From contig NC_043008.1 of NCBI RefSeq assembly GCF_006345805.1, forward strand, positions 62,310,001 to 62,374,000: a DNA stretch of 64,000 bases, written 5' to 3'. A program made the translations under genes and the position numbers. Shown in pieces: positions 10,219 to 64,000 of the stretch. Positions within the stretch are counted from its first letter, which is position 1. Every line of letters starts with the position of its first letter. Below the pieces are notes generated by a model, which saw only the letters and a list, made by a program, of their open reading frames with translations, did no database searches and had not been told where the DNA came from. This DNA is from Octopus sinensis (lineage: Eukaryota).

Positions 10219-10283
<65 letters not shown>

Positions 10284-10333
10284 TATCTATTTACCTACCT
10301 ATCTATATTTCTATCTATCTACATATACATCTA

Positions 10334-10440
10334 TTTTTTAATTTTTATTTTTATTTTCCTTTTTTTATCCCCCAAAAGAAAAGCTCTACTTTGTAATTTG
10401 TCCCCTCTGTGTTCAGCCCTGTGTGGCTAATAAAGAAACA
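10334..10440 (+). mobile_element. 5'-truncated 3' end of the Tx1-clade LINE
   Basis: CAAAAGAAAAGCTCTAC...AGCCCTGTGTGGCTAATAAAGAAACA nearly matches 16484-16551; (TATC)n lies on both sides. Confidence 0.9.
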
Positions 10441-10471
<31 letters not shown>

Positions 10472-10698
10472 ATCTCTATCACAATGGACGGACGCTAGTC
10501 ATATCGGCTCCAAGTAAGTTGGCCACTTTTACATGTTTAAAACTCCTTGTTGTCAAATATTTTGTTTTAATCGTTGTGCAAATTCATTCACTAAAAAACC
10601 TGAGAATTATTCACGTAGAATTCCGCCCCTGTATGGGCGAAATTACAAAAAAACTTTCAAAACTTTCGTGGGTTTTTTAGCCATTTTTCATTTTGAAA

Positions 10699-12725
10699 AT
10701 GGCAACTAAAACCACGTGGCTAGCCCGCCAGTCATGCAGAACGGTAGCAAAACACTACTATTGCTACCACTAGCTGCTAAACATCGCAGCGTGAACACCG
10801 CTGTCACCACCATCACCACCACCACACAACAACACAACAAATCTAACGTCGCATTCACCATCGCCGCGACCAAAGACATTAACTTAGATTTCCCCTCACT
10901 CCCCCACCACTTGTTGATGATAAAGGGACAGAGAAGGGATTTCAAAAATGAATACAAACGAAAACATGAATGCCAGCACCACCACCATCACCACCAACAA
11001 CAACAACAACGAAATTGGCACAAAGCCGCCTACCAAAGACAACACCGCCACACCAACACCACACACTACTACGACGTCAAATGCTACATCCCAGCCTTCT
11101 GCTGCTAATACCGCCAACACCAACACCACTACCATGACTTCAATTAACACTGCCACAATTAACACTTCTACTGCCAAATTCAAAACGAATTTTGCGGACG
11201 TAACAAAACAAAAAAGAACAATTGTAACATTCACCACACAGAGATAAACCGCACAAAGGCACTCTTCTCCAAAGAAGGAGACAAATTGCACCTTCATATT
11301 CCACAACACATCGTGGAAAACACGCAAAAAAAACAATAATTTATAAAGTAATAAACAAAAAAACAAGAAGAACAGAAATGCACCGCAGGAAAAAATCGAT
11401 AAATGCCTTCGTCCTGTATGGGACTCCAAGGAATATATCAGTTGGGGAAACAAATTTGGTACAGTCCAAGTACGTTTCCTCAACGAAAGTTTAGCAAAAC
11501 GTTTTTTCCACATTGGAACTACATCGGACGACTTGGTAATGATACCAGTCTATTTAAACAAAAGGGTCACGAAAGTCCAAATAAAAAACATACCATTTGA
11601 TGTCGAAACACAATGGGTGGTCTCTGCCATCTGCTTTGAAATGTCAGAGACAATGTCAGAGACAAACATCCTGGAAATCGCGGTTCTAGGAGAGAAAGAC
11701 TATGTGGGCAATCAATCGAATTCCTGCTTCAATTGGATGAAGCAGCAAGAGAGAAGATACCCACCGCTATAGAACTGCCAGGAGGCTACAAACTCTATAT
11801 AGTGGTAGAGGGCAGGCGACCACGCTGCTATTTGTGTGGAAGCGAAACACACTTGAAAAAGACGTGCCCAACCACTGCACACCAGAGCAACAACAACAAC
11901 CACTACCACAACCAAAGCACTCCGGAAAAAAAGCTCTACTACCCACCACCACCATCAACACAGAAGACGACAAGAGAAGCACACCAAGCTAATCCGTCAT
12001 CAACCAAAAACCACTCGACACCTGGAAAATACCAACACTACCATCAACAGCAAACCCAAAGGAACAGAAAACAAAGAAAACACACACAAACTGATCCCCC
12101 ATCCCTTATACCGCACTCAACACACACAAACACTCAACAACCAACAACAACGAAAAACAACACAACCACTTACACAGACATACATAGAAGCCCACAACAT
12201 ACCCCTACCCCCTTCTGATTCCTCAGAATTTCGTCGGAAGACGAAACCAGTGAGGAATGGCAAATAGCTACAAAAAGAAGGAAAATAAAGAGCAGAAACA
12301 CAACCAAACCAAATGCAAACACGAACAAAGCAGGGGAAATACATCTCCCGAAGACATTTCAAAACCCAACGCAAACACAAGCCACACCAACACCACAAAA
12401 ACATATACAGCAACATGCTCACAGCCATAGACACCAAAAACACAAATTTGATGGAATACATCCAATCAAAAACAAACATAACAGAAGATGACATAAAAAA
12501 AACAACCACCCATACACAACACCACCAGACCACATCAAAATAATACACATCTCCAAAAGTCTGCACCACACACTCAAAGGCATTTTCCCCAGTGCGGTTG
12601 GTAATGCCAAAAATATCTCACAAAGAAACTGTACTGGGATCTTCTCGAGGACAAACCAACGGAGGAGAAAGCAAAACTTTCGAGCAGTAAGTAACCCTCT
12701 GTATTCTAATTCATTAGAACTATGA
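10699..12725 (+). pseudogene. Tx1 ORF1 (gag-like), frameshifted in this sequence
   Basis: KVTKVQIKNIPFDV and KIPTAIELPGGYKLYIVVEGRRPRCYLCGSETHLKKTCP (CX2CX4HX4C, 11826-11867). The stop TGA (12723-12725) overlaps the ORF2 ATG. Confidence 0.75.
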
Positions 12726-15700
12726 TCAAGATTGGTTGTGTAAATGCGCGTGGCTTGGGGTCCCCTTGGAACAAGGGTACCTCTTAAATGACATAAAGTC
12801 ACATAAGTTAGAAATCATAGCCATAAGCGAGACCAGACTCCACAATCCGCGGGCCCTAAAGACCATGTTTGGCGGACAGTTCAACATTTATTTTTCCCCC
12901 TGTCTGCCGAGAATGGGCGGTAGTGGCACCGCGGTACTTTTTCACAAGAGTCTGGATCTCAATGTAAGGACAATATTCGTAGACCCGGAGGGTAGACTGG
13001 TCGTCCTGGATGTCGACGGCAGCAATGGGTGCGCTTTTCGGCTCGTATCAGTTTACGCACCGCCCTTAACAGGTCGGGCGGATTTCTTTCAACGTCTATA
13101 AGTTTTCTTGGGAACGTCTCGTCCTTTACTCTTAGTGGGGGATTGGAATGCTACCTTGGACACGCATGTAGACTACGTGGGTAGAGATAGGAATAGACGG
13201 GGATGCAAATGCCTCAGAGACCTGCTCAGACGCTTTCAACTGTCTGACAGGTTTCGACTAGACCACCCGAATGCGCCAACGTGGACATGGAGCAACCGCA
13301 TCGGGTCGTCGAGATCGTATCTAGATAGGATACTGTGTAGGACAGTAGATAGAGATAGCATAGGATGTCCACAATTCCACATAGTCAGCTACACGGATCA
13401 CAAACTTGTGACATGTACGCTAGACTTAGGTAAGACACTTAGGCAGGGTCCCGGATACTGGAAACTAAACGCGTCTTTCCCATCGAGACAAGTTTTCAGA
13501 GACCGGATTAGCACACTAGTAAAGAGGGCTTTGACGGGAGCCATCATCAACAACAAATGTGGTTTGCCCTCAAGAGAGCAGTAAAAGCAGAAGCGATTAG
13601 GTACAGCAAAGCACTAGCCATAGATAGAATAGAGTAGAGGGTGAGCTAGTTAAGAAGCTAGAAGAGGCAATTAGAAGCGGCATCGCATCCGACGTTTTGG
13701 CGGCGAGGTTGGCCCTCGACCAACACTTCAACGCCAAACACGAAGGATGTGCTGTCAGAGCTAGGATGCGTGCTCTAAGGAACGAAGGTGTTGGAGCCGC
13801 GAGAGAGGCCCGGGTGCAGAGGCGCAACAGGGCAACAAAGCCACCATTCGGTCACTGGTAGATGAACAGGGGCGCGAATTGCTCGAGCCAAGTAAAATGT
13901 GTGAGGCCTTTCAGCAGCATTTTGCCCGACTGTTCGGAACGAGTGGAGGGCAAGAACGTAGGGTGGACTTCAGTGCCTACCTACATAGCCTACCACGACG
14001 ACTCTCGACAAGAAAGGCAGGGTGCTGCGAAGGTGCCATCACGGCGGCGGAAGTGCGGGAAGTGATGGCAGAATGCTCGAGGGACAAATCACCGGGTTTG
14101 GATGGTCTACCCTACGAGCTTTACAATTGTATGCCAGACTTGTTTGGAGATCTCTTGGCGGCGGTGTACTGCAACTGCAGCAAAACGGGAGCATTCCTGG
14201 TTTTGTGAGCCGAGGAGCCGTAACACTGCTGAAGAAAGATCTAAACAAGGGAAATGTAATAGATAACTTTAGGCCATCACTCTGCTTAATGCAGACTTGA
14301 AAATTTTGGCCAAGGTGCTAGCCAAGAGGTTGGCGCTTGTCATCGAGAAACTGGTCGACAAGCGCAAACATGCGCCGTGCCAGGCCGGACCATCCATGAC
14401 AACCTCCATCTGATGCGCTACATCATAGACAGGGTAGTTAACGAACCTGGCATGGGTGGGGCCCTGATCAACTTGATCAATCAAAAGCCTTTGATAGGGT
14501 AGACCATCGATACTTGGAGGCAGTCCTGAGAGCGGCTGGTTTCGGTCCCGTCTTCCGCGGCTGGATAGCTGCCTTGTACAGAGGCATCCGTTCGGTAATT
14601 CGCGTAAATGGACATCTATCGAGACCTTTCGACATTGCACGTTCGGTCCGTCAGGGATGCCCCCTCTCGGCGCTTCTATACGTATTGACTCTTGAGCCAC
14701 TACTGCGGAAGCTGGCGACTCTAAGGGGCATCCCGCGAGAATTGGGATGCGGGACGAGCGTGTCTGCATACGCGGACGACGTCACCGTCATAGTGTCTAG
14801 CCACGAGCACATCGAGCTGGTCGGTGAGACACTGAAAAACTACGAAGCGGTGACAGGAGCGAAAATCAACCGGGAAAAGTCAGTGGGCTTGCGACTAGGC
14901 ACCTGGAGAAGCAAGCCCATGCCGTCCACCAGCGCCTCCGTCGTGGGACGCTGGACCGACGGCCCGGTTGAGTTGCTCGGGGTCTGGTTTGGTCCGGACC
15001 TCCAAGTGGAGAAGAACTGGAACGAGATAACGAGTAGGGTGGTCACTCTCGCCCGGCAATGGGCCGAGAGGAAACTGTCCCTAAAAGGTCGAGCGGAGGT
15101 GGCGAACACGTACATCGCGTCCGTCATCTACTACCGCCTGACCGTCGTACCTTGTCCCGACCCTACCATCACCAAACTACAACGCATCCTCTTTCGCTTC
15201 TTGTGGAAAGGATGCGTCCCGATGGTCAGGCGATCCATTTGCTGTCAACACCCGTTAAAAGGAGGGCTGGGCATGCCGTGGTTGATGATGCGCAGACACG
15301 CGCTGAGACTGCGACATCTCTGGCTCTATGTAGACGACGGTGAACAGGTGTGGTCGCCGTTTGTGAGGCACGCTTTCCCGCAGCTCGTCTCCATGACCGA
15401 ACTGCAGTCGTGGATCAAAAAAGAGGCCGAGAAGGGCGAATGGCACCGCGAGTGTCGCGTTGCTCTCAAGCAACTCTGCCGTCCTGGGTCGACCTTAAGT
15501 GACTTCAACACAACCAAAGCATTCTATAGGGGTTTAGTGGAGGGGAGGTACGACGACGAGCTCGGGGCGAACCTGGACGTCGACGAGGAGTACCTGACCC
15601 GCCTGTTCGGGACGACTTTCGGGCCAGGGCCCATGGACAACTTCCAGAGATCCCTGGCCTGGCAGTGCTACCGAGAAGCGCTACCCGTTCGGGATAAGCT

Positions 15701-16152
15701 CTACAGACACGGCTCGAGAAACACGGGGCCGACCTGCCCGAGATGCGGTCAGAGCGACGAAACCGTTCTGCACGCACTCGTTCAGTGTCCAACAATTTCC
15801 GACCTGTGGGCTTATGTCGAACAACTGCTGTCACGTGTGGGACGAGTCGGTTTTCAGCTGAGTCTATCGTCAATATTGTCACGCCTCCTTCCTTCAAACG
15901 GGAAGGAAGAGCTATTTTCATCATCCTTGTGGCTATGGCGAAAGAATGTATCTGGTGGACGCGTCTGAAAGGATTGGAGACAAACACTTTCCTCTCTGGT
16001 CAATCTCTCATCAACTTCTTCAAGTACCACTTGAAAAGGAAAGTGAGAGTAGAGAGGCAAGTTTTGTCTAGCGAATATTTTAAAAAAGATGGGTGAATGT
16101 AGCAAGAATGGCACGTATGAATGACGAAGCCACCTTGAGCATAGTCCTATGA
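12722..16152 (+). pseudogene. Tx1 ORF2: APE endonuclease, reverse transcriptase and C-terminal zinc finger (~1147 codons if ten 1-nt deletions are restored)
   Basis: APE motifs: VNARGL, AISETRL, SVYAP, VGDWNATLD, SYLDRIL, YTDHKLV, YWKLN. RT motifs: KSPGLDGLPYE, KAFDRVDH, VRQGCPLS, AYADDVTV, GGLGMP. Zinc finger: CPRCG...ETVLHALVQCP. Confidence 0.93.
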
Positions 16153-16602
16153 ACCCAGAAATCGAAAACAGAGAGTTGCTTATTTGCAAAAAAAAAAAAA
16201 AAAAAAAGAAATATAAAATGTGACTTCATTGACCGAGGTTACCGTGGTCTTTTCTGCAGGCTTTTCTTTCCACGGGTAAACCTCACCTGTCCTCCCCTTT
16301 ACACTTCATATTGACATTTCTGTGATAACGATCCCTATTGATCATTTTTTTTTTCCTCCCCCCCCCCCCTTTTTTTTTTTTTTTTTTAACCCCCCTTATT
16401 TTTGTCCTCTTTCTCTCCTTTTACGATCCCTTTTGATCGAACCTCCCCCTTCCTTTTTTTTTTTTTTTTTTTTTTAATACCTTCAAAAGAAAAGCTCTAC
16501 CTTGTAATTTGTTCTATCTGTGTGCAGCCCTGTGTGGCTAATAAAGAAACATATCTATCTATCTATCTATCTATTTATCTATCTATCTATCTGTCTATCT
16601 AT

Positions 16603-16731
16603 ACTTAATTTATCGACCCTGAAAGGATGAAAAGCAACGTCAACCTCGGCGAAATTTGAACTCAGAACATAACGGCAGACGAAATACCGATAAGCATTTC
16701 ACCCAGCGTGCTAACGTTTCTGCCAGCTCGC
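16603..16731 (-). mobile_element. SINE A 5' part inside the TATC/CCAT tract
   Basis: Reverse complement carries the family A head (GGCGAGCTGGCAGAAACGTTAGCA) and the B-box-like GAGTTCAAATT. Confidence 0.85.
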
Positions 16732-16816
16732 CACCTATCTATCTACTTATCTATCTATCCATCTATCCAGCCATCCAACTACCCATCCATCCATCCATCC
16801 ATCCATCCATCCATCC

Positions 16817-16903
<87 letters not shown>

Positions 16904-16945
16904 CATCTATCTACCTATGTATGTATCTAGCTAGCTAGCTATCTG
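16732..16945. repeat. (CCAT)n/(TATC)n microsatellite
   Basis: Seen directly. Confidence 0.95.
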
Positions 16946-26597: not shown

Positions 26598-26689
26598 CGA
26601 TAGTGACAGAGAGAGATTTGGGTGTGTGAGGTATATGGTTATCTAAATACTTACAGGATGCTGTGTATAAATTATCTGATTTACAGAAA

Positions 26690-27240
26690 AATGAAAACAA
26701 CACTGACGTTTCATAATCCTTGCCTTCAGTCCTTTACAAGGAGTTTTGTTGGTTTCTTGCTCAACTGCACCCCACACATAATAATCAAGTGGATTACAGT
26801 CTGGGGAGTTAGGTGGCCAGATGCGAGGTGTGATGTCGCAAAAATTGTCTGACAGTCATGACTGGGTTGTCCTGCTTGTGTGACATGGTGCAGAGTCCTG
26901 TTGCCAGACACAGGGTCTTCCAGCAACCACTGTCTTGACCCAGAGCAGTACTACCTCCTCCAGGCACTTGATGTAGGTCTCTGTTTTGAGTCTGAGGCCG
27001 TGTGGGAAGATGAATGGAGTTCTTTTCTTATCTTATCAGAATGATGAGAGTTTTCTGAGCTGATGTACCTTTGTAATCACCATTAAACTCATCCACCTTA
27101 TTCTGAATCCTCTGCACTGTCCTCAGATTGACATCCAAACACTCTGAAATGTTTGTATTGGACCTTCTGGTGTGCATGCCAAGCAGTACAGCATGTCGTT
27201 TCCAAATCTCTGGTAGACTGACTTGCATTACGATGCTGTT
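26690..27240 (-). mobile_element. Internally deleted maT/DD37D-type Tc1/mariner relic
   Basis: N-terminus MQVSLPEIWKRHAVLLG...VQRI joined directly to PFIFPHGLRL...WQQDSAPCHT...WPPNSPDCNPLDYYVWG. Confidence 0.8.
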
Positions 27241-27574
27241 TTCACACAGATGGTGCCCAACTGACCCTACTATACACAGTATTTGACAAAATCAGAAACA
27301 GTGCATATGCAGGAAATTAAAAATATAAAATAGCAACAATTTACCCATCGCACCCTAAACACTCAGTAATGTACATTAGTGGTACGTGTTTCTACAGCTG
27401 AGTGAACTGGAGCAACATGAAGTGAAGTGTTTTATTCAAGAACACAATGCATCGCCTAGTCCAGGAATCGAAATGATCATGAGTCCAACACCCTAACCAC
27501 TAAGCCACGTGCCTTCACTAATTAGTATACTCATTATTAATTTTACCAAGAGATAACCTTGGATCATAGAGTGA

Positions 27575-28155
27575 CCTGCTGTTCTTGAGGAGACCTATTG
27601 AGTCAAATACATCAATACCAACATCAAAATAAAAATCAAATGGAAATTGTAGTTAAGATACCCATGCCGGTGACACGTAAAAAGCACCATCCGAACATGG
27701 CAGATGCCAGCACCGCCTGACTGGTATCTGTGTCGGTGACACATAAAAGCACCAACCAATCGTGGCTGTTTGCCAGCCTCCTCTGGCCTCTGTGCTGGTG
27801 ATGCGAAAAGAGCACCCACTACACTCACAGAGTGGTTGGCGTTAAGAAGGCCATCCAGCTGTAGAAACACTGCCAGATCAGACTGGAGCCTGGCACAGCC
27901 TCCGAACATGGTAGATGACAGTGCCGCCTGACTGGCGTCCGTGTCGGTGACACATAAAAGCACCAACCAATCGTGGTCGTTTGCCAGCCTCATGGAGTGG
28001 TTGGTGTTAGGAAGGCCATCTAGCTGTAGAAACACTACCAGATCAGACTGGAGCCTGGCACAGCTTCCTGCCTTCCCAGACCCCAGTTGAACTGTCCAAC
28101 CCATGCTAGCATGGAAAACGGACGTTAAACGATGATGATGATGATGATGATGATG
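27575..28155 (+). mobile_element. SINE family C with internal partial duplication
   Basis: The module plus tail-proximal block occurs twice (about 27690-27900 and 27901-28060), then the (GAT)n tail. Confidence 0.85.
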
Positions 28156-29114: not shown

Positions 29115-30030
<916 letters not shown>

Positions 30031-30036
30031 TATGCA

Positions 30037-31825
30037 TGGCACATAAAGACACCATCCGAAGACCCGGCGACGTAGTCAGTCCACCTGTGCATACCTTCCC
30101 TCTTATGACACTTGTGAAGACCTGTTGAGGCAAGTGTGTGACACTTGTGAAGACCTGTTGAGGCAGAGGCAAGTGTGTGACACTTTGTGAAGACCTGTTG
30201 AGGCAGAGGCAAGTGTGTGACACTTGTGGAGACCTGTTGAGGCAAGTGTGTGACACGTGTGACACTTGTGAAGACTGTTGAGGCAAGTGAAAATCAAACC
30301 AAATCAAAATAGATGAACATCAATGGAATTGTATCTTTGTGGTTCCAGTACCGGTGGCACACAAGAAAACCATCCGAACGTGGCCGTAGCCAGTACCGCA
30401 TCGACTGGCCTCCGTGCTGTGGGCACAACAAACACCATCTGATCGTGGCCGTTCGCCAGCCTCATCTGGCACCTGTGTCGGTGGCACATAAAAACACCAT
30501 CCGAAGACCCGGCGACGTAGTCAGTCCACCTGTGCATACCTTCCTTCTTATGACACTTGTGAAGACCTGTTGAGGCAAGTGTGTGACACTTGTGTAGACC
30601 TGTTGAGGCAAGTGAAAATCAAATCAAATCAAACCAAATCAAAATAGATGAACATCAATGGAATTTGTATCTTTGTGGTTCCAGTAGCGGTGGCACACAA
30701 GAAAACCATCCGAACGTGGCCGTAGCCAGTACCGCATCGACTGGCCTCCGTGCTGTGGGCACGTAACAAACACCATCCGATCGTGGCCGTTCGCCAGCCT
30801 CATCTGGCACCTGTGTCGGTGGCACATAAAAACACCAACTGAAGACCCGCAAGACTAGTCAGGCCATAACCCGTGGACCCTACCTGGGACGTAGTCAGTC
30901 CACCTGTGCATACCTTCCTTCCTTCTTGTGACACTTGTGAAGACCTGTGAAGACCTGTTGAGGCAAGTGAAAATCAAATCAAATCAAATCAAAACAAATC
31001 AAAATAGATGAACATCAATGGAATTTGTATCTTTGTGGTACCAGTGCCGGTGGCACACAAGAAAACCATCCAAACATGGCCGTAGCCAGTACCGCATCGA
31101 CTGGCCTCCGTGCTGTGGGCACGTAACAAACACCATCCGATCGTGGCTGTTCGCCAGCCTCATCTGGCACCTGTGTCGGTGGCACATAAAAACACCATCC
31201 GAAGACCCGGCAAGACTAGTCAGGCCATAACCCGTGGCTCCTACCTGGGACGTAGTCAGTCCACCTGTGCATACCTTCCTTCTTGTGACACTTGTGAAGA
31301 CCTGTTGAGGCAAGTGAAAATCAAAACAAATCAAAATAGATGAACATCAATGGAATTTGTATCTTTGTGGTACCAGTGCCGGTGGCACACAAGAAAATCA
31401 TCCGAACGTGGGCGTAGCCAGTACCACATAGACTGGCCTCCGTGCTTTGGGGACGTAACAAACACCATCCGATCGTGGCCGTCCGCCAGCCTCATCTGGC
31501 ACCTGTGTCGGTGGCACATAAAAACACCATCCGAGCGTGGCCGTCTGCCAGCCTCGTCTGGCACCTGTGTCGGTGGCACATAAAATACACCATCCGAGCG
31601 TGGCCGTTCGCCAGCCTCGTCTGGCACCTGTGTCGGTGGCACATAAAATCACCCACTACACTCTCGGAGTGGTTGGCGTTAGGAAGGGCATCCAGCTGTA
31701 GAAACACTGCCAGATCTGACTGGCCTGGTGCAGCCTTTGGGCTCCCCAGACCCCAGTTGAACCGTCCAACCCATGCTAGCATGGAAAACGGACGCTAAAT
31801 GATGATGATGATGATGATGATGATG
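30037..31825 (+). repeat. Hierarchical tandem array of the family C 5' part (332-360 bp units) ending in one family C tail
   Basis: AGATGAACATCAATGG at 30311, 30646, 31006 and 31338; only the last unit runs into the tail and (GAT)n. Confidence 0.92.
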
Positions 31826-32797: not shown

Positions 32798-33225
32798 GAG
32801 CAAAACGCCCCCGGTCCAATGGACGGTGCTGAGTTGTCAAGCATTTAAACCAAATTTTCTCAAAACAACTTGTCCGACCGTCTCATAGACCTCCATCTTG
32901 AGGAACACTGATTTAACCTAAATTTGAGACCAGCAAAAGAAGAAATAAAGATAGACTTTTTTTCTATTCCAAAGAAAAACAATTTTATTCACACAAATAT
33001 GCAACCGAAGAGTTTAAAGTACCAGTAATGATAAGGCTGTTGATTGGGAGAACAGCTTTATCGATCGCATTCTCACCTGGAATCGATTTTTGGAATTTAA
33101 AAAAAAAATTATGCATGCCCTGATATTATCGGTATCTACATATCGAATTTAAGTGCAATCGGATGGAGGATGCCTGAGATACTAGAAGACACACACACAG
33201 ACAACGAATTTCATATAATATATAT

Positions 33226-33660
33226 AAATCAAAATCAAAATCGATCAACATCAATGGAAATTGCAGCTGTGATACCAGTGCTGGTGGTACGTAAGAAAAC
33301 CATCCGAACGTGGCCGTTGTCAGCACCGCCCCAACTGGCCTCATACTGGTGGCACGTAAAATGCACCATCCGATCGTGGCCGTTGCCAGCCTCGCATGGC
33401 CCCCGTGCCGGTGGCACGTAAACAGCACTATCCAATCGTGGCTGTTTGCCAGCCTCGTCTGGCACCTGTGCCGGTGGCACGTAAAAAGCACCCACTGCAC
33501 TCACGGAGTGGTTGGTGTTAGGAAGGGCATCCAGCTGTAGAAACATTGCCAGATCAGACAGGGCCTGGTACAGCCTTCTGGCTTCCCAGACTCCAGTTGA
33601 ACCGTCCAACCCATGCTAGCATGGAAAGCAGATGCTAAGCGATGATGATGATGATGATGA
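33226..33660 (+). mobile_element. SINE family C monomer with ~62-bp hairpin modules
   Basis: Same modules and tail as 31338-31825. Confidence 0.87.
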
Positions 33661-34097
33661 TATATATATATAGCTAATTGCGTCATTTTTGTGAATCACT
33701 GGGTTAGATAAATAATATTGGGCATTGTTTTATGAGAAATCCTTCTCGTATCATTAATGTTGACATAATTCTTGATTAAGTGGTTTCTTATTCTACCTTC
33801 TAGGACACAAACCTAAAGGACAATTTATTGATAGAAGAAATTAGGAACCTCAATCCATTTAATTGCTAATGCATCTGAAAAGCTTACCTGCTTCTCAGTA
33901 GATTGAATGACAAACAGCTTTAATGGATTTCAACCTTTATCTGGAATTCATCAGAAAGTGTCTACCTCACTTGATCAATCCTAAATAAATAAGTAGCAAA
34001 TCCATTTATATACACATGGAATCTAGAAGCTCCATAGACCTAGAGCTGATAATTTGCATACTATACGTGCGTAATGTTTTGCTTAATATTAGAGGAC

Positions 34098-35231
34098 AGC
34101 AAGGAGGTGAAGTGGCAGAAACGTTAGCATGCTAGGCGAAATGCTTAGCAGTATTTCATCTGTCTTTACATTCTGAGTTCAAATTCTGCCGAGGTCAACT
34201 TTGCCTTTCATCCTTTCAGAGTCGATAAATTAAGTACCAGTTACGCACTGGGGTCGATGTAATCGACTTAATCCGTTTGTCTGTCCTTGTTTGTCCTCTC
34301 TGTGTTTAGCTCCTTGTGGGTAGTAAAGAAATAGGTATTTTGTCTGTCTTTACATTCTGAGTTCAAATTCTGCCGAGGTCAACTTTACCTTTCATCCTTT
34401 CAAAGTCGATAAATTAAGTACCAGTTACGCACTGGGGTCGATATGATTGACTTAATCCGTTTGTCTGTCCTTGTTTGTCCTCTCTGTGTTTAGCTCCTTG
34501 TGGGTAGTAAAGAAATAGGTATTTTGTCTGTCTTTACATTCTGAGTTCAAATTCTGCCGAGGTCAACTTTACCTTTCATCCTTTCAAAGTCGATAAATAA
34601 GTACCAGTTACGCACTGGAGTCGATGTAATCGACTTAATCCGTTGTCTGTCCTTGTTTGTCCTCTCTGTGTTTAGCTCCTTGTGGGTAGTAAAGAAATAG
34701 GTATTTTGTCTGTCTTTACATTCTGAGTTCAAATTCTGCCGAGGTCAACTTTACCTTTCATCCTTTCAAAGTCGATAAATTAAGTACCAGTTACGCACTG
34801 GGGTCGATATGATTGACTTAATCCGTTTGTCTGTCCTTGTTTGTCCTCTCTGTGTTTAGCCCCTTGTGGGTAGTAAAGAAATAGGTGTTTTGTCTGTCTT
34901 TACATTCTGAGTTCAAATTCTGCCAAGGTCGACTTATCCTTTCATCTTTTCAGGGTCGATAAATTAAGTACCAGTTACGCACTGGGTCGATATAATCAAC
35001 ATAATCCGTTTGTCTGTCCTTGTTTGTCCTCTCTGTGTTTAGCCCCTTGTGGGTAGTAAAGAAATAGGTATTTTGTCTGTCTTTACATTCTGAGTTCAAA
35101 TTCTGCCAAGGTCAACTTTACCTTTCATCCTTTCAAGGTTGGTAAATTAAGTATCAGTTGCGTACTGGGCTCGATCTAATTGACTGGCTCCCTCTCCCAA
35201 AATATCGGGTCTTGTGCCTAGAGTAGGAAAG
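34098..35231 (+). mobile_element. SINE A multimer: head, five ~184-bp bodies with the Tx1-like tail, and one body with tail type 2
   Basis: Units start at 34151, 34335, 34519, 34701, 34885 and 35068. Flanked by the 13-bp direct repeat AATATTAGAGGAC (34085-34097, 35232-35244). Confidence 0.93.
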
Positions 35232-35665
35232 AATATTAGAGGACTGTTACTGGGAGTTCAATTCATGCAATATCAAAGTAAGATATATGTAAACCTGAGC
35301 AATAGACATACAAATGTGTCAAAATTACCCGTTCCTTGCAAATTCGAAAAATGATGAACAGCCTTCATCCCTTTTAAATACACACATAATTTGTGAAGGC
35401 ACATAGCTCAATGGTAAGGACATCAGACTTACAATCATGAGGTTGTGAGTTCAATTCCTAGACCAAGCTGTGTGTTGTGTTCTTGAGCAAGACACTTTAT
35501 TTTCCCGCTTTGCTCTAGTTCACTCAGCTGTAGAAATGAATTGTATAGAACAAGTTTCTTCCACTTCCCATCTACAAAATCCAGTTAAAGGGTTTTGGTT
35601 GGATGGTTGCTTCTTATAAAAGCTTGCTCAGTTCTCAGATTTGATCTGTTGATATCTCTGAATAT

Positions 35666-35868
35666 CGGCGAGCTGGCAGAACCGGGTGAAATGCGTAGCC
35701 GTATTTCGTCTGCTGCTACGTTCTGAGTTCAAATTCCGCCAATGTCGACTTTGCCTTTCATCCTTTCAGGGTCGATAAATTAAGTACCAGTTATGCACTG
35801 GGGTTGATATAATCGACATAATCCGTTTGTCTGTCCTTGTTTGTCCCCTTGTGGGTAGTAAAGAAATA
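35666..35868 (+). mobile_element. SINE A monomer with 15-bp TSD
   Basis: GATATCTCTGAATAT at 35651-35665 and 35869-35883; the element ends ...GTAAAGAAATA with no poly(A). Confidence 0.92.
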
Positions 35869-36555
35869 GATATCTCTGAATATACCCACTATTGTTCAGG
35901 AACAAAATCAAATCAATTTTGTAATACGTTTGAAAGTTACTTAGAATTCATCATTTACTTGAATAAAAAATGTCTGGTAGAAACAAATGTCGCTGCTTTG
36001 TTTTATTTTTTTTTTTTGGTTTGTGTCAAAATGTTTTTTTTACAACCAGTTCGTTCATATTAAATATTTACTTGTTGTCGCCAACTACTAGCCTTTACAT
36101 TGGTTTTTCAAGTGACAAAAAAACCGTTGGCATATGTGTAGTGTTGTTTTTATGCAATTCATCAAATTTGTCAACTTCACTAACATCATATTAATCATCA
36201 GCATCATTTAACATCCTTTTTCCATGCTGGCATGGGTTGGACAGTTTGACAGGAGTTAGTCAGCTGGAGTAAGTTGCCTGGGCTCATATCTGTTTTGGCA
36301 TGGTTTCTACAGCTGGATGCCCTTCCTAATGCCAACCCCTTTACAGTGTGTACTGAGTGCCTTCACGCAGCACTAGCATGAGTGCTTTTATATGGTACCG
36401 GTACTGGTGCTTTTTTTTGTGGTACCAACACCCACAAGCCTGGAAGATCAGGAATCCTCAGCTGAAGAGTGATGCAGGATACACGCCTGTGTATAAAGGA
36501 CAACCTGGTATTTACTTAGATGATGTGTTTGCTCAAGCACAGCAAACTGCCAGAA

Positions 36556-37196
36556 GGTGGCGAGCTGGCAGAAACATTAGCACGCCGGGCGAAATGCTTA
36601 GCAATATTTTGTCTGCCGCTACATTCTGAGTTCAAATTTCGCCGAGGTCCACTTTGCCTTTCATCCTTAAATAAGTACCAGTTACACACTGGGGTTGATA
36701 TAATCGACTTAATCTGTTTGTCTGTCCTTGTTTGTCCTCTCTGTGTTTAGCCCCTTGTGGGTAGTAAAAAAATTTATAAGGCGGCAAGCTGGCAGAATCG
36801 TTAGCACACCAGGCTAAATACTTAGCGGTATTTAGTCTGCCGTTACGTTTGGAGTTCAAATTCCACCGAGATTGACTTTTCCTTTCAGGCTTTCAGGGTC
36901 AATAAATTAAGTACCAGTTATGCACTGGGGTCAATGTAATCGACTTAATCCATTTGTCTGTCATTGTTTGTCCCCTCTGTGTTTATCCCCTTGTGGGTAG
37001 CATAGAAATAGGTATTTCATCTGCTGCTATGTTCTGAGTTCAAATTCTGCCGAGGTCAACTTTTCCTTTCATCCTTTCAGTGTCAATAAATTAAGTACCA
37101 GTTAAACACTGGGGTCAATGTAATCAACTTAATCCATTTACCTGTCCTTGTTTGTCCCCTCTATGATTAGCCCCTTGTGGGCAATAAAGAAATAAG
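36556..37196 (+). mobile_element. SINE A monomer followed by a SINE A head+2-body dimer
   Basis: Second head at ~36779; internal junction GAAATAG|GTATTTC at ~37013. Confidence 0.88.
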
Positions 37197-37854
37197 AAGT
37201 TTTGGTCCCCTGTGATATCTTCTGTGAGGCCCAACATCTGAAAATCCTTTTTCACCACTACATCCAACATCTTCCTCGGTCTAACCCTTCCATGTGTTCC
37301 CTCCACATGCAGACCCTTGCACTTCTTGATGAAACTGTCATCATTCATAACATTTATTCTAAAACCACTGGAAATATTTTTTCACAAAATGTTTGAATAT
37401 ATTTTTATAATATATTTATTTACTTTATTATATATTTTTTTTTCTTTTTGGCCTGTATCTTATTTGTGCAAAATTAAAGGCTTTTGCCCGTTTATGGAAT
37501 GTGCTTCACTGATATAATTGTGTTCAATGTTACTTAATGTAAGACACCTATTCAAAATGCCTGGGATCTTTTTTTTATTTAATGGGTGAGAAAAATTAAA
37601 AGAAACACAGTCCGCTTTTATGCTTTGAGCTAAATGCAAACAGATTAAAAACAGAAAAATATCATTATTTTTCATTTTGAAAATTATTTACATAAAATAA
37701 ACCATAATACCAAAAAAAAAAAGAAAGTAAAGACATTATCAAGACAAGGAACAACAGCAAAATGAATCAGGGAGTAAGAGGAGAAAGAGACGACGATGAA
37801 GGAGAAAGAAGGAGAGAAGAGGTATAAGAAGGGGAATAATAATAATAATAATTG

Positions 37855-40774: not shown

Positions 40775-42047
40775 TCAGGTCATCCCATAAGTTCTGTCCA
40801 ATTTTACCTTTTTTAAAATTGAATGAAATTTAATAGTATTTTAGAATGTCTAATGGAATTAAAAATTATTTTTATACATTTGTGTACATTTAAACTAATT
40901 AAATATTATTTTACAGAATAATAGAATTAAAATTTCTTTGATTAAAACCCTTTCTAACATGGAAGTATCCAAAGAGCATTTAAGGCACATAATGCTTTAT
41001 GAGTACAAAAAAGGAAACTCTGCAGCTGAAGCGATTAGGAACATACACTCAGTTTATGGGAAAGAATGCTTGAATGAAAGAACTTGCAGAAGATGGTTTG
41101 CAAAATTTAGAAGTGGAGATTTCAGCCTTGCAGAAGATTGAACAGGATTTCCAGTTGAGTTTGATGATAAGCTCTTTGAGGCATTACTTGAAGAAAATCC
41201 TGCATTATCAGTTGAAGAATTGGCAATAAAGCTTAGTTCAAACCATACAATTGTTCATCGTCATCTTCAACAACTTGGAAAGGTTCCTAAACTTGGAAAA
41301 TGGATGCCTCATGAATTGTCTAAAAGCAACTGCAAATCCTGAGTTGATATCTGTTCTTCTCTCCATTCTCGCAAACTCATTTCACCCTTTTTGGAAAGAC
41401 TTCTGACTGGTGACAAAAAATGGATCTTCTACCGAAATGTTAAATGTTGTCAACAGTGGCTTGGTGGAAGGGAAAAAGCTCAACCACAACTGAGAATGGA
41501 ACTTTATGGGAAAAAGGTTCTCTCTATCTGGTGGGATTGCAAAGGGGTAATTCATTTTGAATTGTTACCACCTAATGCAACAATCATTTCTCAAGTCTAC
41601 TGTCAGCAATTAGTGCGTTCGAACTAAGCTTTGAAGGAAAAAAGATCCGCTTTAGTGAATCGAAAAGGAGTGATGTTTCAGCAGGACAATGCATGACCCC
41701 ACACTTCAAAGATCACATCACAGAAGATTGAAGAGCTTGTTTGGGAAAAAATTCCTCATCCACCTTATTCTCCCGACCTTGCTCCTTCAGACTACCATTT
41801 GATTCGTAGTTTACAGAATCATTTGGGGGACATAACTTTTGAGGAGGTTGAAACTGACGTTTCAGAGTTCTTCGCTTTGAAACCAAAAGAGTTTTACATT
41901 GATGAGATTAAAAAGCTTGTAAATAGATGGAAGGAAGTCATAAAGAATCAGGGAAAGCACATTGATGATTAAATTTCAATTAAATATAACATTTGATCAC
42001 TTGTTTTCTTTAGTCAAAATTCAGACAGAACTTATAGGATGACCTGA
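40775..42047 (+). mobile_element. Full-length mariner (1273 bp) with inactivated transposase (40959-41972)
   Basis: 24-bp TIRs TCAGGTCATCCCATAAGTTCTGTC with one mismatch, TA target duplications, and motifs WMPHEL, LTGDKKW, QQDNA*PH, YSPDLAPSDYHL. Confidence 0.95.
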
Positions 42048-50874: not shown

Positions 50875-51287
50875 TATATCTTTATTACCCACAAGGGGGT
50901 TAGACATAGAGGGGATAAATAAGGACAGACAAAGGGATTAAGTTGATTAGCATTGACCCGAGTGCAAAACTAGTACTTAATTTATCGACCTCAAAAGGAT
51001 GAAAGGCAAAGTCGACGTCGGTGGAATTGAACTCAGAATGTAAAGGCAGATGAAATATCTATTTCTTTACTGCCCACAAGGGGCTACACACAGAGGAGAC
51101 AAACAAGGACAGGTAAATGGATTAAGTCGATTATATCAACCCCAATGCGTAACAGGTACATTTTTAATCGACCCCGAAAGGATGAAAGGCAAAGTCAACC
51201 TCAGCGTAATTTGAACTCAGAACGTAGCGGCTTATGAAATACCACTAAGCATTTCGCCCGGTGTGCTAACAATTCTGCCAGCTCACT
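50875..51287 (-). mobile_element. SINE A head+2-body dimer with 17-bp flanking direct repeat
   Basis: ATAGATTAATATATTCT at 50858-50874 and 51300-51316. Confidence 0.88.
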
Positions 51288-51482
51288 GCATTATATATTA
51301 TAGATTAATATATTCTGTGCAGAAGCAGAATAAGATGCATGACTATAATTTGAACAGATGATCAGAGTCACAAACATTTTGAGTCTGTTTCAATTTCAGG
51401 TTCATTAGGACAAGGTTTATTCCATTTTCCATGGGATACAAGTGACGGAGAGAATAAAATACGCCTCCCATTCTCCAACCAA

Positions 51483-51625
51483 GTCCAAACTCTGCCGAGG
51501 TCGACTTTGCCTTTCATCCTTTCGGGGTTGAAAAATTAAGTGCCAGTTGCATGCTAGTGTCGATCTAATCGACTGGCCCACTCACCCACAAATTTTGGGC
51601 CTTGTGCCTAGAGTAGAAAAGAATG
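51483..51625 (+). mobile_element. Headless SINE A body with tail type 2
   Basis: Ends CTTGTGCCTAGAGTAGAAAAGAAT, like the last unit at 35068-35235. Confidence 0.8.
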
Positions 51626-54845: not shown

Positions 54846-56691
54846 CTGAGTAAAGTTTAGCAGAAACCTTCTAATTTATGTTTTAGCATTAGCCTGAAAT
54901 GAAAATATTTTGATTCTCATTAGGGGAGTTTCTATACAGCCAAGTTTATTGACAGCTTACAAGTGTTTACAATTCCTTTCAGAATATACCTTGCTAAATG
55001 AAAGTTTTCAGTTTAGTGAGATTAGTTCACCATAAATGTGAAATGTTGACTATGGTTAAGAATCAGTTCAAAGACTGCAAAGTAATAGAATTGTCAAAAT
55101 AAGTTTAAATGAAAGCTATGAGATTGTAATATAAAAAAACCAGAAAACACCAAATTCTCAGGAGAAGATTGTGAATGAAAGTAACAAAAAAAAAAAATGC
55201 AATTAACAATCTCTTCTATATAAGAAAAAAAGGAACGCAGAAATTTCTTCATTGATGTCTTGGATGGAATCTTATTCAAAGAACTCTGTCTTTGCTCTAT
55301 ACAGCCTTCTGCTCACATTGATTTTGTTTTCATGAATATTTTCCAACATTATTATTTTTTTTCCCAGAGTTTTTCTGATTTTAAAAGAATTTTTTTTTTC
55401 TTTCTGTTTACATCAACTTTTGTGTCTTTCACTGAATCCACAAGGTTTTGAAAATTTGCAATATTTTCTGTATTAGTGCTTCTATCATAATCCCTACATC
55501 ATTGCTGAATTATGCAAGTATTTCTCTTAATCTTTTTATATATATTTTTAATACTTTTTATTTTTAATTTTCAGATATTACAAACAACATTTCTATATAA
55601 ATTGCTTCGTATTTAAAATAAATTTAGAATTTTTCAAGAAAACAAAATAACAAACCTCTTTCCCAGTAAACCTAAATACAATATGTCAATATTTGATCTT
55701 TAAATGGAATCTTAGATTAACATAAATGCAAAGGATATCAGAAGAAACCATCAATACTGCATACATTCCTCTGGTTCTTCTCAAGTGAATATGTTTGACA
55801 AAACTTTCAGCATTTGGAAAAAAAAGGAACAATGAAATAGCAGCAGATTTCTCCCTTCTCAGCAGCAGCAGTAAAACCACCACCACCACCACCACCAATA
55901 TCATTACCACCACCAATACCATCACACCAACACTACCAATGCAGCCACAACCACCACAGCTATCACACTACCATCACCACTGCAACAAACACCACCACCA
56001 TCACAAACACCACTGCCACAATCTCCACCACCACAACCACCACCACCACAACCACCACCACCATCCTACCTCTGACTAGTATTGATCTATAATTATTTTC
56101 CCTTATTGAACATTATTGGACAGAAACAACAAATAAAGCAAAGTGGAATAAATGCGTTTATTTTTTTAGATATTCTCATAATTGTGAAAGAATCTTGGAA
56201 AACCTTTGAAGCTGTATTTTATAGAATAAAACTGTTTTGCCATGATTTTCTAGTATCTTCACCTCATATCACAGAAGTTTTCATGACTCTAAGAGAAATG
56301 CTTCGCATTTTATTGCAATTTAAACACTTGTTATTTGTCATAGCTTGTTCAACATTTAAGAAATAAACAGATAAATGTTGAAACATTCAGAGCAGATAAA
56401 ATCTGTAATTAGGGTTGCTGTACTTATTAAGATTGGGAACCATGTGTGTCAACAGTACATTGGGTATATATTTGTCAAAAGCAATAACAGTCTCTTTGCT
56501 CATTGCTACACGATGTATGATATTACATTTCAACAGTTTAGATATGGTTTCTGGTCTATAAACTGCGAAATGTTTACCATAGTTTGGCACCATCACAGCT
56601 AAGCAACTCAATGTGCGAGACAAACATGGCAGGCATTTACTTCATAGAATTTTTAATATTTATAATATTTCATAATATTTTTAATATTTCC

Positions 56692-57112
56692 AAGGCGGCG
56701 AGCTGGTAGAAATGTTAGCATGCTGGGCAAAATGCTAAGTGGTATTTCATCTGCCGTTACGTTCTGAGTTCAAATTCCACCAAGGTCGACTTTACCTTTC
56801 ATCCTTTCAGGGTCGATAAATTAAGTACCAGTCATGCACTGGGGTTGATATAATCGACTTAATCCATTTCTCTGTCCTTGTTTGTCCTCTCTGTGTTCAG
56901 CCCCTTGTGGGTAGTAAAGAAATAGGTATTTCATCTGCTGTGACGTTCTGAGTTCAAATTCTGCCAAGCTCGGCTTTGCCTTTCATCCTTTTGGGGGTCG
57001 ATAAATTAAGTACCAGTTATGCACTGGAGTCAATATGATCGACTTAATCCATTTCTTTGTCCTTGTTTGTCTCCTCTGTGTTTAGCCCCTTGTGGACAAT
57101 AATGAAATAAGA
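56692..57112 (+). mobile_element. SINE A head+2-body dimer with 14-bp TSD
   Basis: ATTTTTAATATTTC at 56677-56690 and 57113-57126; junction GAAATAG|GTATTTC. Confidence 0.9.
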
Positions 57113-57134
57113 ATTTTTAATATTTCTCACACAA

Positions 57135-63760: not shown

Positions 63761-63843
63761 AAACGAATTTTGGGAGGGGCTGAGGCATTGGAGAAGGGGA
63801 TCTTTTGTCAGATGATGAAAGGTTAGTGTGTGACAGAGAAACA

Positions 63844-64000
63844 GGTGGCAAGCTGGCAGAAACGTAACACGCCGAACGAATTGCTTAGCGGTATTTCATC
63901 TGCGGTCATGTTCTGAGTTCAAATTCCGCCGGAGTAGACTTTACGTTTCATCCTTTTGGAGCCGATAAATTAAGTACCTGTTATGCACTGGGGTTGATGT
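63844..64000 (+). mobile_element. SINE A running off the window end
   Basis: Family A head and body. Confidence 0.85.

What the first reader, a model, noticed from the sequence alone, without database searches (positions are those of the whole stretch)
34085..35244. SINE A multimers: head+(body)n with a fixed junction, each bounded by one TSD
Seen: n=6 here (13-bp TSD), n=2 at 36779, 50875 (17-bp repeat) and 56692 (14-bp TSD), and n=1 at 35666 (15-bp TSD). Repeats restart at the same point (...AAAGAAATAG|GTATTT; the 50.9-kb copy differs by one base), between the A-box-like and B-box-like motifs. In the hexamer, units 1/3 share GATGTAATCGAC and units 2/4 share GATATGATTGAC (period-2), and the last unit has a different tail. 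Inference: recurrence at four loci points to an RNA- or master-level origin (dimeric master, repeated template jumps onto RNAs processed at this site, or rolling reverse transcription of a ~184-nt circle), followed by local dimer duplication.
Basis: partly seen in the sequence, partly recalled or inferred. Interest (0 to 1): 0.8.

Follow-up and report, generated by a model that had tools for sequence, protein, structure and literature searches.

The report
Dimeric octopus SINE, one copy locally expanded
An octopus short retrotransposon occurs as a "one-and-three-quarters" dimer that was copied around the genome as a unit, and one copy later grew to six units by ordinary local duplication; this is a well-known kind of event in repeat evolution, not a new mechanism.

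Summary
At 34098-35231 a 53-bp head is followed by six 184-bp units, flanked by an exact 13-bp target-site duplication. Three more loci carry head+2 units with the same junction (AAATAG|GTATTT). That motif occurs 8 times against 0.11 expected.

The six-unit array did not arise in one step. Its units differ by 1 to 16 positions in a non-star pattern. Unit 1 and units 2-6 resolved the same CpG in opposite directions. Every junction now carries a T4 stop, and the last unit switches to another subfamily's tail. It was a dimer at insertion and grew by unequal crossover.

The three dimers are old (units 12-22% apart) and share almost no private changes within a locus. Across loci they share position-specific differences between unit 1 and unit 2, and head variants travel with unit-2 variants. 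That fits a dimeric source element that retrotransposed as a unit.

The tail matches the 3' end of a LINE in the same window, the likely partner. No ribozyme or tRNA model matches, and a rolling circle is rejected. Recurrent RNA processing plus template jumping is not excluded. It is not needed, apart from the independent origin left open for the hexamer's founding dimer. A genome-wide census could not be run.

The parts
34085..34097 (.). 5' target-site duplication of the hexamer (AATATTAGAGGAC)
   Evidence: Exact 13/13 match with 35232-35244.
34098..34150 (+). Head of the hexamer. It carries the A-box-like TGGCAGAA at 34113 and the 5' arm plus loop of the hairpin GAAATGC-TTAGCA-GTATTTC.
   Evidence: Alignment with the other heads; motif positions; hairpin counts.
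34151..34334 (+). Hexamer unit 1 (A-type body, X tail ...GGGTAGTAAAGAAATAG). It is the only unit with TTTCATCTG.
34335..35067 (+). Hexamer units 2-5 (starts 34335, 34519, 34701, 34885). Each begins GT[A/G]TTTTG, a T4 run. Unit 2 and unit 4 differ at 1 position.
35068..35231 (+). Hexamer unit 6. The 5' 70 nt match the array; the 3' part and tail are of the B subfamily (...TGGCTCCCTCTCCCAAAATATCGGGTCTTGTGCCTAGAGTAGGAAAG).
   Evidence: Alignment with B-type copies at 51482-51625 and in O. bimaculoides L024.
35232..35244 (.). 3' target-site duplication of the hexamer
35666..35868 (+). Monomer (n=1) with X-type tail and internal deletions, flanked by a 15-bp TSD at 35651-35665 and 35869-35883
36554..36775 (+). 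Monomer with X-type tail. It lies 2-3 bp upstream of the next SINE, in head-to-tail orientation.
36778..37199 (+). Dimer: head 36778-36827, unit 1 36828-37011 (X tail), unit 2 37012-37199 (Y tail GGGCAATAAAGAAATAAGAA). No TSD found.
50875..51293 (-). Dimer: head 51293-51243, unit 1 51242-51059, unit 2 51058-50875. Junction AAATAG|ATATTT. 17-bp repeat at 50858-50874 and 51300-51316.
56691..57112 (+). Dimer: head 56691-56741, unit 1 56742-56925, unit 2 56926-57112. 14-bp TSD at 56677-56690 and 57113-57126.
16602..16736 (-). Partial copy (head plus the first 85 nt of the body), embedded in a (TATC)n/(GATA)n microsatellite
63842..64000 (+). Copy that runs off the window end; n unknown
12718..15965 (+). 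Coding part of the likely partner LINE: an endonuclease (Exo_endo_phos) in two frames, then RVT_1 plus zf-RVT
   Evidence: Pfam scan. Closest named relative is an Argonauta hians protein at 63% identity.
16502..16602 (+). 3' end of that LINE (...CTGTGTGCAGCCCTGTGTGGCTAATAAAGAAACA) followed by (TATC)n. It is homologous to the SINE tail.
   Evidence: nhmmer hit of the SINE profile, E=9.2e-5; sequence.
10380..10480 (+). Second, 5'-truncated copy of the same LINE 3' end plus (TATC)n, preceded by (TCTA)28
   Evidence: nhmmer E=1.3e-6; sequence; TRF.
51482..51625 (+). 5'-truncated B-subfamily SINE, used as the reference for tail B

Best explanation
SINE A is a LINE-dependent short retrotransposon of an octopod genome. 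It has a ~50-nt head with an A-box-like motif. Its ~184-nt body has a B-box-like motif, a conserved core, and a ~45-nt tail copied from the 3' end of an endonuclease+RT LINE that is present in the same window.

The multimers belong to a dimeric (quasi-dimeric) form. A complete element with the derived 'X' tail (...AGTAAAGAAATAG) is joined to a second unit that lacks the first ~50 nt and keeps a LINE-like tail ('Y', ...AATAAAGAAATAAGA).

Inferred: the junction arose once or very few times. Possible routes are a deletion fusing two head-to-tail neighbours, or a reverse-transcriptase jump from the 5' end of one SINE RNA to the 3' end of another. The dimer was then transcribed from the single 5' promoter and retrotransposed as a unit. 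That gives one target-site duplication per dimer and the same junction everywhere.

Shown: the hexamer was a dimer (X unit plus a unit with tail B) when it inserted. It grew to six units afterwards by unequal crossover or replication slippage, and the last step duplicated a two-unit block.
For: 1. Same junction at all 8 unit boundaries in 4 loci.
2. One TSD around whole multimers: 13/13 and 14/14, plus a 17-bp repeat.
3. Dimer units are 12-22% apart, no closer than units of different loci. They share only 1, 0 and 1 private states within a locus, so they are not late local duplications.
4. Position-specific states recur across loci. All three second units have AATAAAG, the ...ATAAGA end and GGGGTCAAT. 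All first units, both monomers and hexamer units 1-5 have AGTAAAG...ATAG.
5. Linkage across the junction. Loci 36778 and 50875 share a non-CpG head variant (GAAT) and a non-CpG unit-2 variant (CTCTATG). Dimer heads keep GGCGGCG where the monomers with a comparable 5' end have GGTGGCG.
6. In the hexamer, pairwise differences among units 1-5 run from 1 to 16 (dispersion p~0.01). Unit 1 has CG->CA where units 2-6 have CG->TG. That requires at least 2 units early on and a single progenitor for units 2-6.
7. Tail B abuts an intact TSD, so it was present at insertion.
8. A T4 run follows every hexamer junction, so the present array cannot be read through by Pol III.
9. The SINE tail matches the LINE 3' end at 16502-16551 and 10396-10440. 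The LINE encodes an endonuclease and an RT.
10. The consensus has no T4 run, so a dimer could be transcribed from one promoter.
Against: The sample is tiny: three dimers, one hexamer and two complete monomers in 64 kb. Several diagnostic sites are CpG sites, where parallel decay is common.

The hexamer keeps CCG where five of the six dimer units have CCA, and it ends in tail B rather than Y. It is therefore either an early or recombinant offshoot of the dimer lineage, or an independent second origin of the same junction. The second case would favour a recurrent mechanism.

X-tailed monomers with good TSDs exist, so X RNAs were themselves mobile and could have served as jump acceptors.

No genome-wide census or orthologous empty site could be obtained.
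Confidence: 0.6

Rival explanations
1. Recurrent RNA-level formation. SINE RNAs acquire a 5' end at the 3' edge of the head hairpin loop, either by cleavage or by a block to reverse transcription. During target-primed reverse transcription the LINE enzyme runs off this end and jumps to the 3' end of a second, full-length SINE RNA. Head+2-unit copies would then arise independently at many loci.
For: The unit starts at the first base of the 3' arm of a 7-bp inverted repeat (GAAATGC/GTATTTC). That repeat can pair in 92.9% of cells, against 32-64% in slid registers. The upstream partner is always a complete 3' end (...AAATAG). Terminal units carry two different tail types (Y three times, B once) on the same junction. 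The hexamer has ancestral CCG where the dimers have CCA, which fits a separate event.
Against: Head and unit-2 variants are linked across the junction in two loci. Dimer heads differ from monomer heads. No X-X dimer and no solo unit starting at GTATTT occurs in the window. Covariation in the hairpin is not significant: 54-61 of 500 shuffles reach the observed value. No known RNA-processing motif was found. One event plus amplification explains the same facts.
Confidence: 0.2
2. Two separate insertions per locus. A 5'-truncated SINE landed exactly at the 3' end of a resident full-length SINE.
For: SINEs in this genome often sit head-to-tail a few bp apart: 36554-36775 followed by 36778, and 57112 followed by 57134. 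The same is seen in O. bimaculoides L024 at 19008/19226 and in Argonauta L023 at 14827-15323.
Against: One TSD brackets the whole dimer, and there is no second TSD or spacer at the junction. The same truncation point to the base would have to recur at four loci.
Confidence: 0.05
3. Independent local tandem duplication of the body at each locus after insertion of a monomer, guided to the same breakpoints by microhomology.
For: The hexamer shows that local duplication does occur in this element. The tail end GAAATAG resembles the head segment GAAATGC...AG.
Against: Units within a dimer share only 0-1 private states and are as far apart as units of different loci. Second units have a different tail type from first units, and that type is shared between loci. 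Misalignment on the shared GAAAT would give AAAGAAATGCTTAGCGGTATTT, which is not the observed junction (inference from the sequence).
Confidence: 0.03
4. Rolling reverse transcription of a ~184-nt circular RNA (retrozyme-like) makes arrays of n units in one step.
For: Unit length is constant (182-184 bp) and the junction is fixed.
Against: Terminal units continue past the junction point into ...ATAAGA or into tail B, not into GTATTT. Every multimer begins with a head that is not part of the circle. Units within a multimer are of different subtypes. Hexamer units are not equidistant. No hammerhead or other self-cleaving ribozyme family matches at E<=10.
Confidence: 0.02

Closest known systems
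Dimeric and quasi-dimeric SINEs. Examples are Alu = FLAM+FRAM, murid B1 with its internal duplication, and shrew-mole Urop (terminology in SINEBase, PMC3531059; Urop in PMC13023118). Colugo and other tRNA-unit dimers and trimers are cited in PMC4758252.
   Same: Two SINE-derived units are fused at one fixed junction and amplified as a unit from a dimeric source. Monomers coexist with the dimers. The right-hand unit need not keep a full promoter: PMC13023118 notes right monomers that lack box B, and here the right unit lacks the A-box part.
   Different: The duplicated part is 184 of about 236 nt (body plus LINE-derived tail), not a whole small-RNA-derived monomer. There is no A-rich linker. 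The two units carry different tail variants. The partner is a LINE with a specific shared 3' tail, not an L1 acting through poly(A).
Variable internal repeat number within a SINE family. Examples are the 'quasioligomer' CHRS, whose ~20-nt motif is repeated more than 10 times (PMC3531059), and the VNTR region of hominid SVA elements (own knowledge).
   Same: The copy number of an internal repeat differs between copies of one family. Arrays grow at the DNA level after insertion, inside one pair of TSDs.
   Different: Here the repeat unit is almost the whole element (184 bp), and expansion beyond n=2 is seen at only one of four loci.
Chimeric retrocopies and tail or module swapping by reverse-transcriptase template switching. 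Inter-SINE template switching is discussed in PMC4824008 and PMC4758252. U6-L1-type chimeras and end-to-end jumping by the R2 RT are own knowledge.
   Same: A complete 3' end of one RNA is joined to a 5'-truncated copy of another, inside one TSD. Heads and cores are shared between subfamilies with different tails (A and B here).
   Different: Those chimeras are usually one-off, with variable breakpoints. Here one breakpoint is shared by all copies, which points to amplification of one product.
Retrozymes and other hammerhead-bearing tandem repeats that make circular RNAs (own knowledge)
   Same: Short non-autonomous retroelement units of 170-400 nt found as head-to-tail repeats in invertebrate genomes.
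   Different: No hammerhead or other ribozyme match. The element has a Pol III-type head and a LINE tail. The arrays are bounded by TSDs and begin with a non-repeated head.

Membership tests
SINE (SINEBase definition, PMC3531059) | Short (<1 kb) interspersed repeat flanked by target-site duplications | tested here: met
   Monomers are 203-222 bp and dimers 419-422 bp. TSDs of 13-15 bp plus a 17-bp flanking repeat. The 1134-bp hexamer exceeds 1 kb only through later local growth.
SINE (SINEBase definition, PMC3531059) | Head derived from a tRNA, 5S or 7SL RNA, with an internal Pol III promoter | tested here: inconclusive
   A-box-like TGGCAGAA and B-box-like GAGTTCAA are present. ARAGORN finds no tRNA, and the Rfam tRNA model gives no hit at E<=10. 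No tRNA library comparison was possible.
SINE (SINEBase definition, PMC3531059) | [quoted passage not shown] | not testable with these tools
   About 8 A-type loci lie in 64 kb, and related copies exist in O. bimaculoides L024. No genome was available.
SINE with a LINE-derived tail (shared-3'-end partnership) | The 3' tail of the SINE is homologous to the 3' end of an autonomous LINE in the same genome | tested here: met
   The SINE profile hits the LINE 3' ends at 16502-16550 (E=9.2e-5) and 10396-10439 (E=1.3e-6). The LINE has endonuclease, RVT_1 and zf-RVT domains. Mobilisation itself was not tested. The predicted tail hairpin is no more stable than shuffled sequences.
Dimeric / quasi-dimeric SINE subfamily | Two units at a fixed junction inside one TSD | tested here: met
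   The TSD is clear for 56691-57112 and for the hexamer, offset by 6-7 nt for 50875-51293, and absent for 36778-37199.
Dimeric / quasi-dimeric SINE subfamily | Copies descend from a dimeric source: unit-specific diagnostic sites are shared between loci and linked across the junction | tested here: inconclusive
   The evidence is supportive but rests on three dimers. A/G at AATAAAG versus AGTAAAG splits 3/3 against 0/10. TCAAT versus TTGAT also separates the units. The head GAAT variant is linked to unit-2 CTCTATG in two loci. Several of these sites are CpG sites.
Locally expanded tandem array (unequal crossover / slippage) | Units share array-private variants, have unequal pairwise distances and show higher-order periodicity | tested here: met
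   Distances among hexamer units 1-5 are 0.6-7.6%, against 9-20% to other loci. Unit 2 and unit 4 are nearly identical. TRF finds a 366-bp period. The dispersion test gives p~0.01.
Retrozyme / ribozyme-bearing tandem repeat | Self-cleaving ribozyme (hammerhead or other) in each unit | tested here: not met
   No ribozyme family matches 33900-37400 at E<=10 on either strand.
Retrozyme / ribozyme-bearing tandem repeat | Circular RNA of unit length | not testable with these tools
   No expression data were available.
Nin-DC / Deu SINE superfamily | Central domain homologous to the published Nin-DC consensus | not tested
   The core ...CTTTCATCCTTTCGGGGTCGATAAATTAAGTACCAG resembles Nin-DC as I recall it, and it is shared at 70-75% with Argonauta SINEs.

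The most novel reading that the evidence does not exclude
The fixed junction marks a defined 5' end of SINE RNA at the 3' edge of an anticodon-arm-like hairpin loop, produced by cleavage or by a modified base that stops reverse transcription. The partner LINE's reverse transcriptase repeatedly jumps end-to-end from there onto the 3' end of a second SINE RNA. Under this reading the X-Y dimers and the X-B founder of the hexamer are independent products of a site-specific multimerisation pathway.
Probability: 0.15. Interest if true: 0.6.

Novelty: new member of a known kind. Interest (0 to 1): 0.3.

Why it matters
The finding documents, in an octopod genome where SINEs make up about a tenth of the DNA (PMC13282606), how a SINE family diversifies: by fusion into a dimer, by swapping tails, and by local array growth. 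It also pairs the family with a candidate partner LINE from sequence alone.

It matters practically for repeat annotation. A monomer consensus will split these dimers, and a tandem-repeat finder will call the hexamer a satellite.

It does not require a new mechanism. Only if the junction proved to be made again and again at an RNA processing site would it bear on how LINE reverse transcriptases choose and switch templates.

Tried and rejected
Attempts to get more octopus DNA for a census:
1. The junction-spanning 61-aa ORF (34547-34732, minus strand) was used as a protein query and gave no hits.
2. The tail pattern TTGTGGGYARTAAAGAAATA was scanned in viral and metagenome contigs. It gave 22 loci, and none contains the SINE by blastn.
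3. The core pattern RTYRATAAATTAAGTACCAGTT was scanned in genome and viral contigs and gave nothing.
4. Homologues of the LINE RT and of another TE ORF gave only one Argonauta hians locus (L023) and one O. bimaculoides locus (L024). L023 has related SINEs with the shared core only. L024 has the same head, but only B-type and partial copies, with no A-type multimer.
5. Exact look-ups of two window ORFs were not on record.

Other checks that led nowhere:
6. Rfam and ARAGORN gave no tRNA, ribozyme or other RNA family in the units.
7. RNA folds of LINE and SINE tails were no more stable than shuffles, with z from -1.1 to +0.6. Whole-element folds were inconsistent between copies.
8. Literature searches, including searches by sequence strings, found no description of this multimer.

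Ideas considered and dropped:
9. Deletion between the GAAAT of the tail and the GAAAT of the next head predicts a junction that is not the one observed.
10. Gene conversion as the source of tail B is unlikely, because the tail abuts an intact TSD with no homology beyond it.
Full report
WHAT THE WINDOW IS. The window is octopod DNA. Its LINE reverse transcriptase is closest to an Argonauta hians protein among named proteins (63% identity). Another transposon ORF is 76% identical to an Octopus bimaculoides protein. The SINE head is found at 82% identity on an O. bimaculoides chromosome. The exact species was not identified.

- Tandem Repeats Finder reports a 184-bp period, 5.6 copies and 94% matches at 34151-35185, with an equally good 366-bp period.
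- The array is head 34098-34150 plus units starting at 34151, 34335, 34519, 34701, 34885 and 35068. It is bracketed by an exact 13-bp repeat at 34085-34097 and 35232-35244.
- A profile built from the copies finds every related element in the window:
  - three head+2-unit elements: 36778-37199, 50875-51293 (minus strand) and 56691-57112;
  - two complete monomers: 35666-35868 and 36554-36775;
  - two partial or cut copies: 16602-16736 (minus strand) and 63842-64000;
  - fragments of related subfamilies.
- TSDs are 15/15 for the monomer at 35666 and 14/14 for the dimer at 56691. The dimer at 50875 has a 17-bp repeat whose upstream copy lies 6-7 nt from the SINE 5' end. The dimer at 36778 has none.
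- The junction motif AAATAGRTRTTT occurs 8 times, always at a unit boundary, against 0.11 expected.

ANATOMY. Each element has three parts.
- A head of about 50 nt carries an A-box-like TGGCAGAA.
- A body of 184 nt carries a B-box-like GAGTTCAA and a conserved core. The core is shared at 70-75% with Argonauta SINEs.
- A tail of about 45 nt ends the element.

The tail is homologous to the 3' end of a LINE in the same window (...TTTGTCCCCTCTGTGTTCAGCCCTGTGTGGCTAATAAAGAAACA(TATC)n). This 3' end is seen at the end of a full-length copy (16502-16551) and in a 5'-truncated copy (10396-10440). The SINE profile hits both, with E=9e-5 and 1e-6. The LINE encodes an Exo_endo_phos endonuclease, RVT_1 and zf-RVT. 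The shared tail is shown. That this LINE mobilises the SINE is inferred from the established shared-3'-end model. A predicted tail hairpin is no more stable than shuffled controls.

Two tail variants exist.
- 'Y' is LINE-like: GGGCAATAAAGAAATAAGA.
- 'X' is derived: GGGTAGTAAAGAAATAG.

A second subfamily, B, has the same head and 5' body but a different 3' body and tail. It is seen at 51482-51625 and complete in O. bimaculoides L024.

WHERE THE JUNCTION LIES. The repeat restarts at the first base of the 3' arm of a 7-bp inverted repeat in the head, GAAATGC-TTAGCG-GTATTTC. Across 12 copies of several subfamilies, 92.9% of cells can pair, against 32-64% in slid registers. Variation is small, however, and covariation is not significant: 54-61 of 500 shuffles reach the observed values. 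The upstream side of every junction is a complete X-type 3' end. No tRNA, ribozyme or other Rfam family matches the region at E<=10, and ARAGORN finds no tRNA.

THE HEXAMER GREW LOCALLY.
- Units 1-5 differ from one another at 1 to 16 positions. Unit 2 versus unit 4 is 1 position; unit 5 versus the rest is 13-16. They are 9-20% from units of other loci. The distances are not star-like (dispersion p~0.01, a rough test because the pairs are not independent).
- Unit 1 has TTTCATCTG where units 2-6 have TTTTGTCTG. The same CpG was resolved in opposite directions, so at least two units existed when it decayed. Units 2-6, including the 5' part of unit 6, descend from a single second unit.
- Unit 6 differs from units 2-4 at 1 of the first 70 columns. 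It then switches to B type, differing at 33-35 of 76-77 positions. Its B tail abuts an intact TSD, so the tail was there at insertion (inference).
- Unequal exchange between the shared 5' halves of unit 1 and the terminal unit yields exactly what is seen: internal units with the 5' half of the terminal unit and the 3' half plus X tail of unit 1. This is an inferred model.
- A T4 run now follows every junction, so Pol III could not read through the present array.

The founder was therefore a dimer, and n=6 needs no RNA-level multimerisation.

THE DIMERS BEHAVE AS COPIES OF A DIMERIC SOURCE.
- Their two units are 12-22% apart (10-18% at non-CpG sites). That is as far apart as units from different loci.
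- Within a locus the units share only 1, 0 and 1 private states. This excludes late local duplication.
- Across loci, second units share states that first units lack. A versus G in AATAAAG/AGTAAAG splits 3 of 3 against 0 of 10 other tails. The ...ATAAGA end and GGGGTCAAT versus GGGGTTGAT also differ.
- Loci 36778 and 50875 share a non-CpG head variant (GAAT) together with a non-CpG unit-2 variant (CTCTATG).
- Dimer heads keep GGCGGCG where the monomers and partial copies with a comparable 5' end have GGTGGCG.

Linkage of variants across the junction is what inheritance from a dimeric master predicts. It is not expected if heads and second units were drawn independently each time. The consensus has no T4 run, so one 5' promoter could transcribe both units. 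The caveats are the very small sample and the share of CpG sites among the diagnostics.

HOW THE FIRST JUNCTION AROSE is not resolved. Two routes fit.
- A deletion could have fused two head-to-tail neighbours. Such neighbours are common: 36775/36778 and 57112/57134 in the window, L024 19008/19226, and L023 14827-15323.
- The reverse transcriptase could have made an end-to-end jump from a 5'-ended SINE RNA onto the 3' end of another.

The hexamer's founder (X plus B tail, ancestral CCG where the dimers have CCA) has two possible origins. It may be a recombinant of the dimer lineage through copy-choice in the shared core. Or it may be a second, independent origin of the same junction. The latter is the main reason the recurrent-mechanism rival keeps about 0.2.

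REJECTED EXPLANATIONS.
- Rolling reverse transcription of a circle. Terminal units run past the junction into other tails, the head lies outside the repeat, units are of mixed subtype and not equidistant, and there is no ribozyme.
- Separate local duplications at each locus.
- Two-step insertion. There is a single TSD, no internal TSD, and an identical truncation point at all loci.

COMPARISON WITH KNOWN SYSTEMS. SINEBase distinguishes quasidimeric SINEs (internal duplication), dimeric SINEs (two SINEs combined) and a 'quasioligomer', CHRS (PMC3531059). Alu, B1 and the recently described Urop are the classic cases. In Urop and Tu SINEs the right monomer can lack part of the promoter (PMC13023118). 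Tail and module exchange by template switching is an accepted mode of SINE evolution in molluscs and other animals (PMC4824008, PMC4758252). The present element sits between 'quasidimeric' and 'dimeric': 184 of about 236 nt are duplicated, including the LINE-derived tail, and one copy has expanded further like a VNTR. I found no published description of this particular octopus dimer. I could not consult Repbase or Dfam.

LIMITS. A census beyond the window was not possible with the collections at hand. All inferences about lineage therefore rest on four multimeric loci.

VERDICT. This is a new member of a known kind, of modest interest.

Noticed in passing
window 10211-16960: A full-length LINE (about 10.5-16.55 kb), a 60-bp 5'-truncated copy of its 3' end (10380-10440) and an inverted SINE fragment (16602-16736) all lie inside one long (TCTA)n/(TATC)n microsatellite (arrays at 10211-10321, 10441-10480, 16552-16602, 16735-16960). 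Either the LINE targets this microsatellite or its 3' end seeds it. SINE TSDs also begin with ATAT-like sequence (AATAT, GATAT, AGAATAT).
   Followed up: partly
window 36554-37199; 56691-57290; L024 19008-19420; L023 14827-15323: SINEs of this group often sit head-to-tail within a few bp of each other, as if new copies land at the A/T-rich 3' end of resident ones. In Argonauta two complete ~250-bp SINEs form such a pair (TRF period 250).
   Followed up: partly
window 34329-34345 and every other junction: The junction reads GAAATAGGTATTTC, a near-palindrome with 6-bp arms. The tail end GAAATA is the reverse complement of the unit start TATTTC, and it resembles the 5' arm (GAAATG) of the head hairpin. 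It is unexplained and may be coincidence.
   Followed up: no
window 35395-35520: An unrelated tRNA-like SINE (GGCACATAGCTCAATGGTAAGG...GGTTGTGAGTTCAATTCC...TTCTTGAGCAAGACACTTTA) lies between the hexamer and the monomer. Rfam gave only weak chance-level hits here.
   Followed up: no
window 30000-31800, 33100-33620, 27600-28150, 26000-26260, 36200-36420: Another repeat family has internal tandem repeats of 33-40 bp and 62-63 bp (TRF rows at 30106-30285, 31460-31653 and 33348-33492) and recurring pseudo-ORFs (...CHRHRCQMRLANGHDRMVF...). It is a second element type in the window whose copies differ in internal repeat number.
   Followed up: no
window 8579-9169, 26646-27291(-), 40899-41969, 19671-20987: Decayed DNA-transposon ORFs. 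Three are mariner-like transposase remnants. The fourth is an element with no Pfam match whose ORFs are 76% identical to O. bimaculoides LOC106880477 and have relatives in many invertebrates.
   Followed up: partly
window 57134-57290 and 61093-61246: Further SINE subfamilies have the same head (GGTGGCGAGCTGGCAGAA...) but different bodies and tails. This shows mosaic, module-swapping evolution of the family.
   Followed up: no
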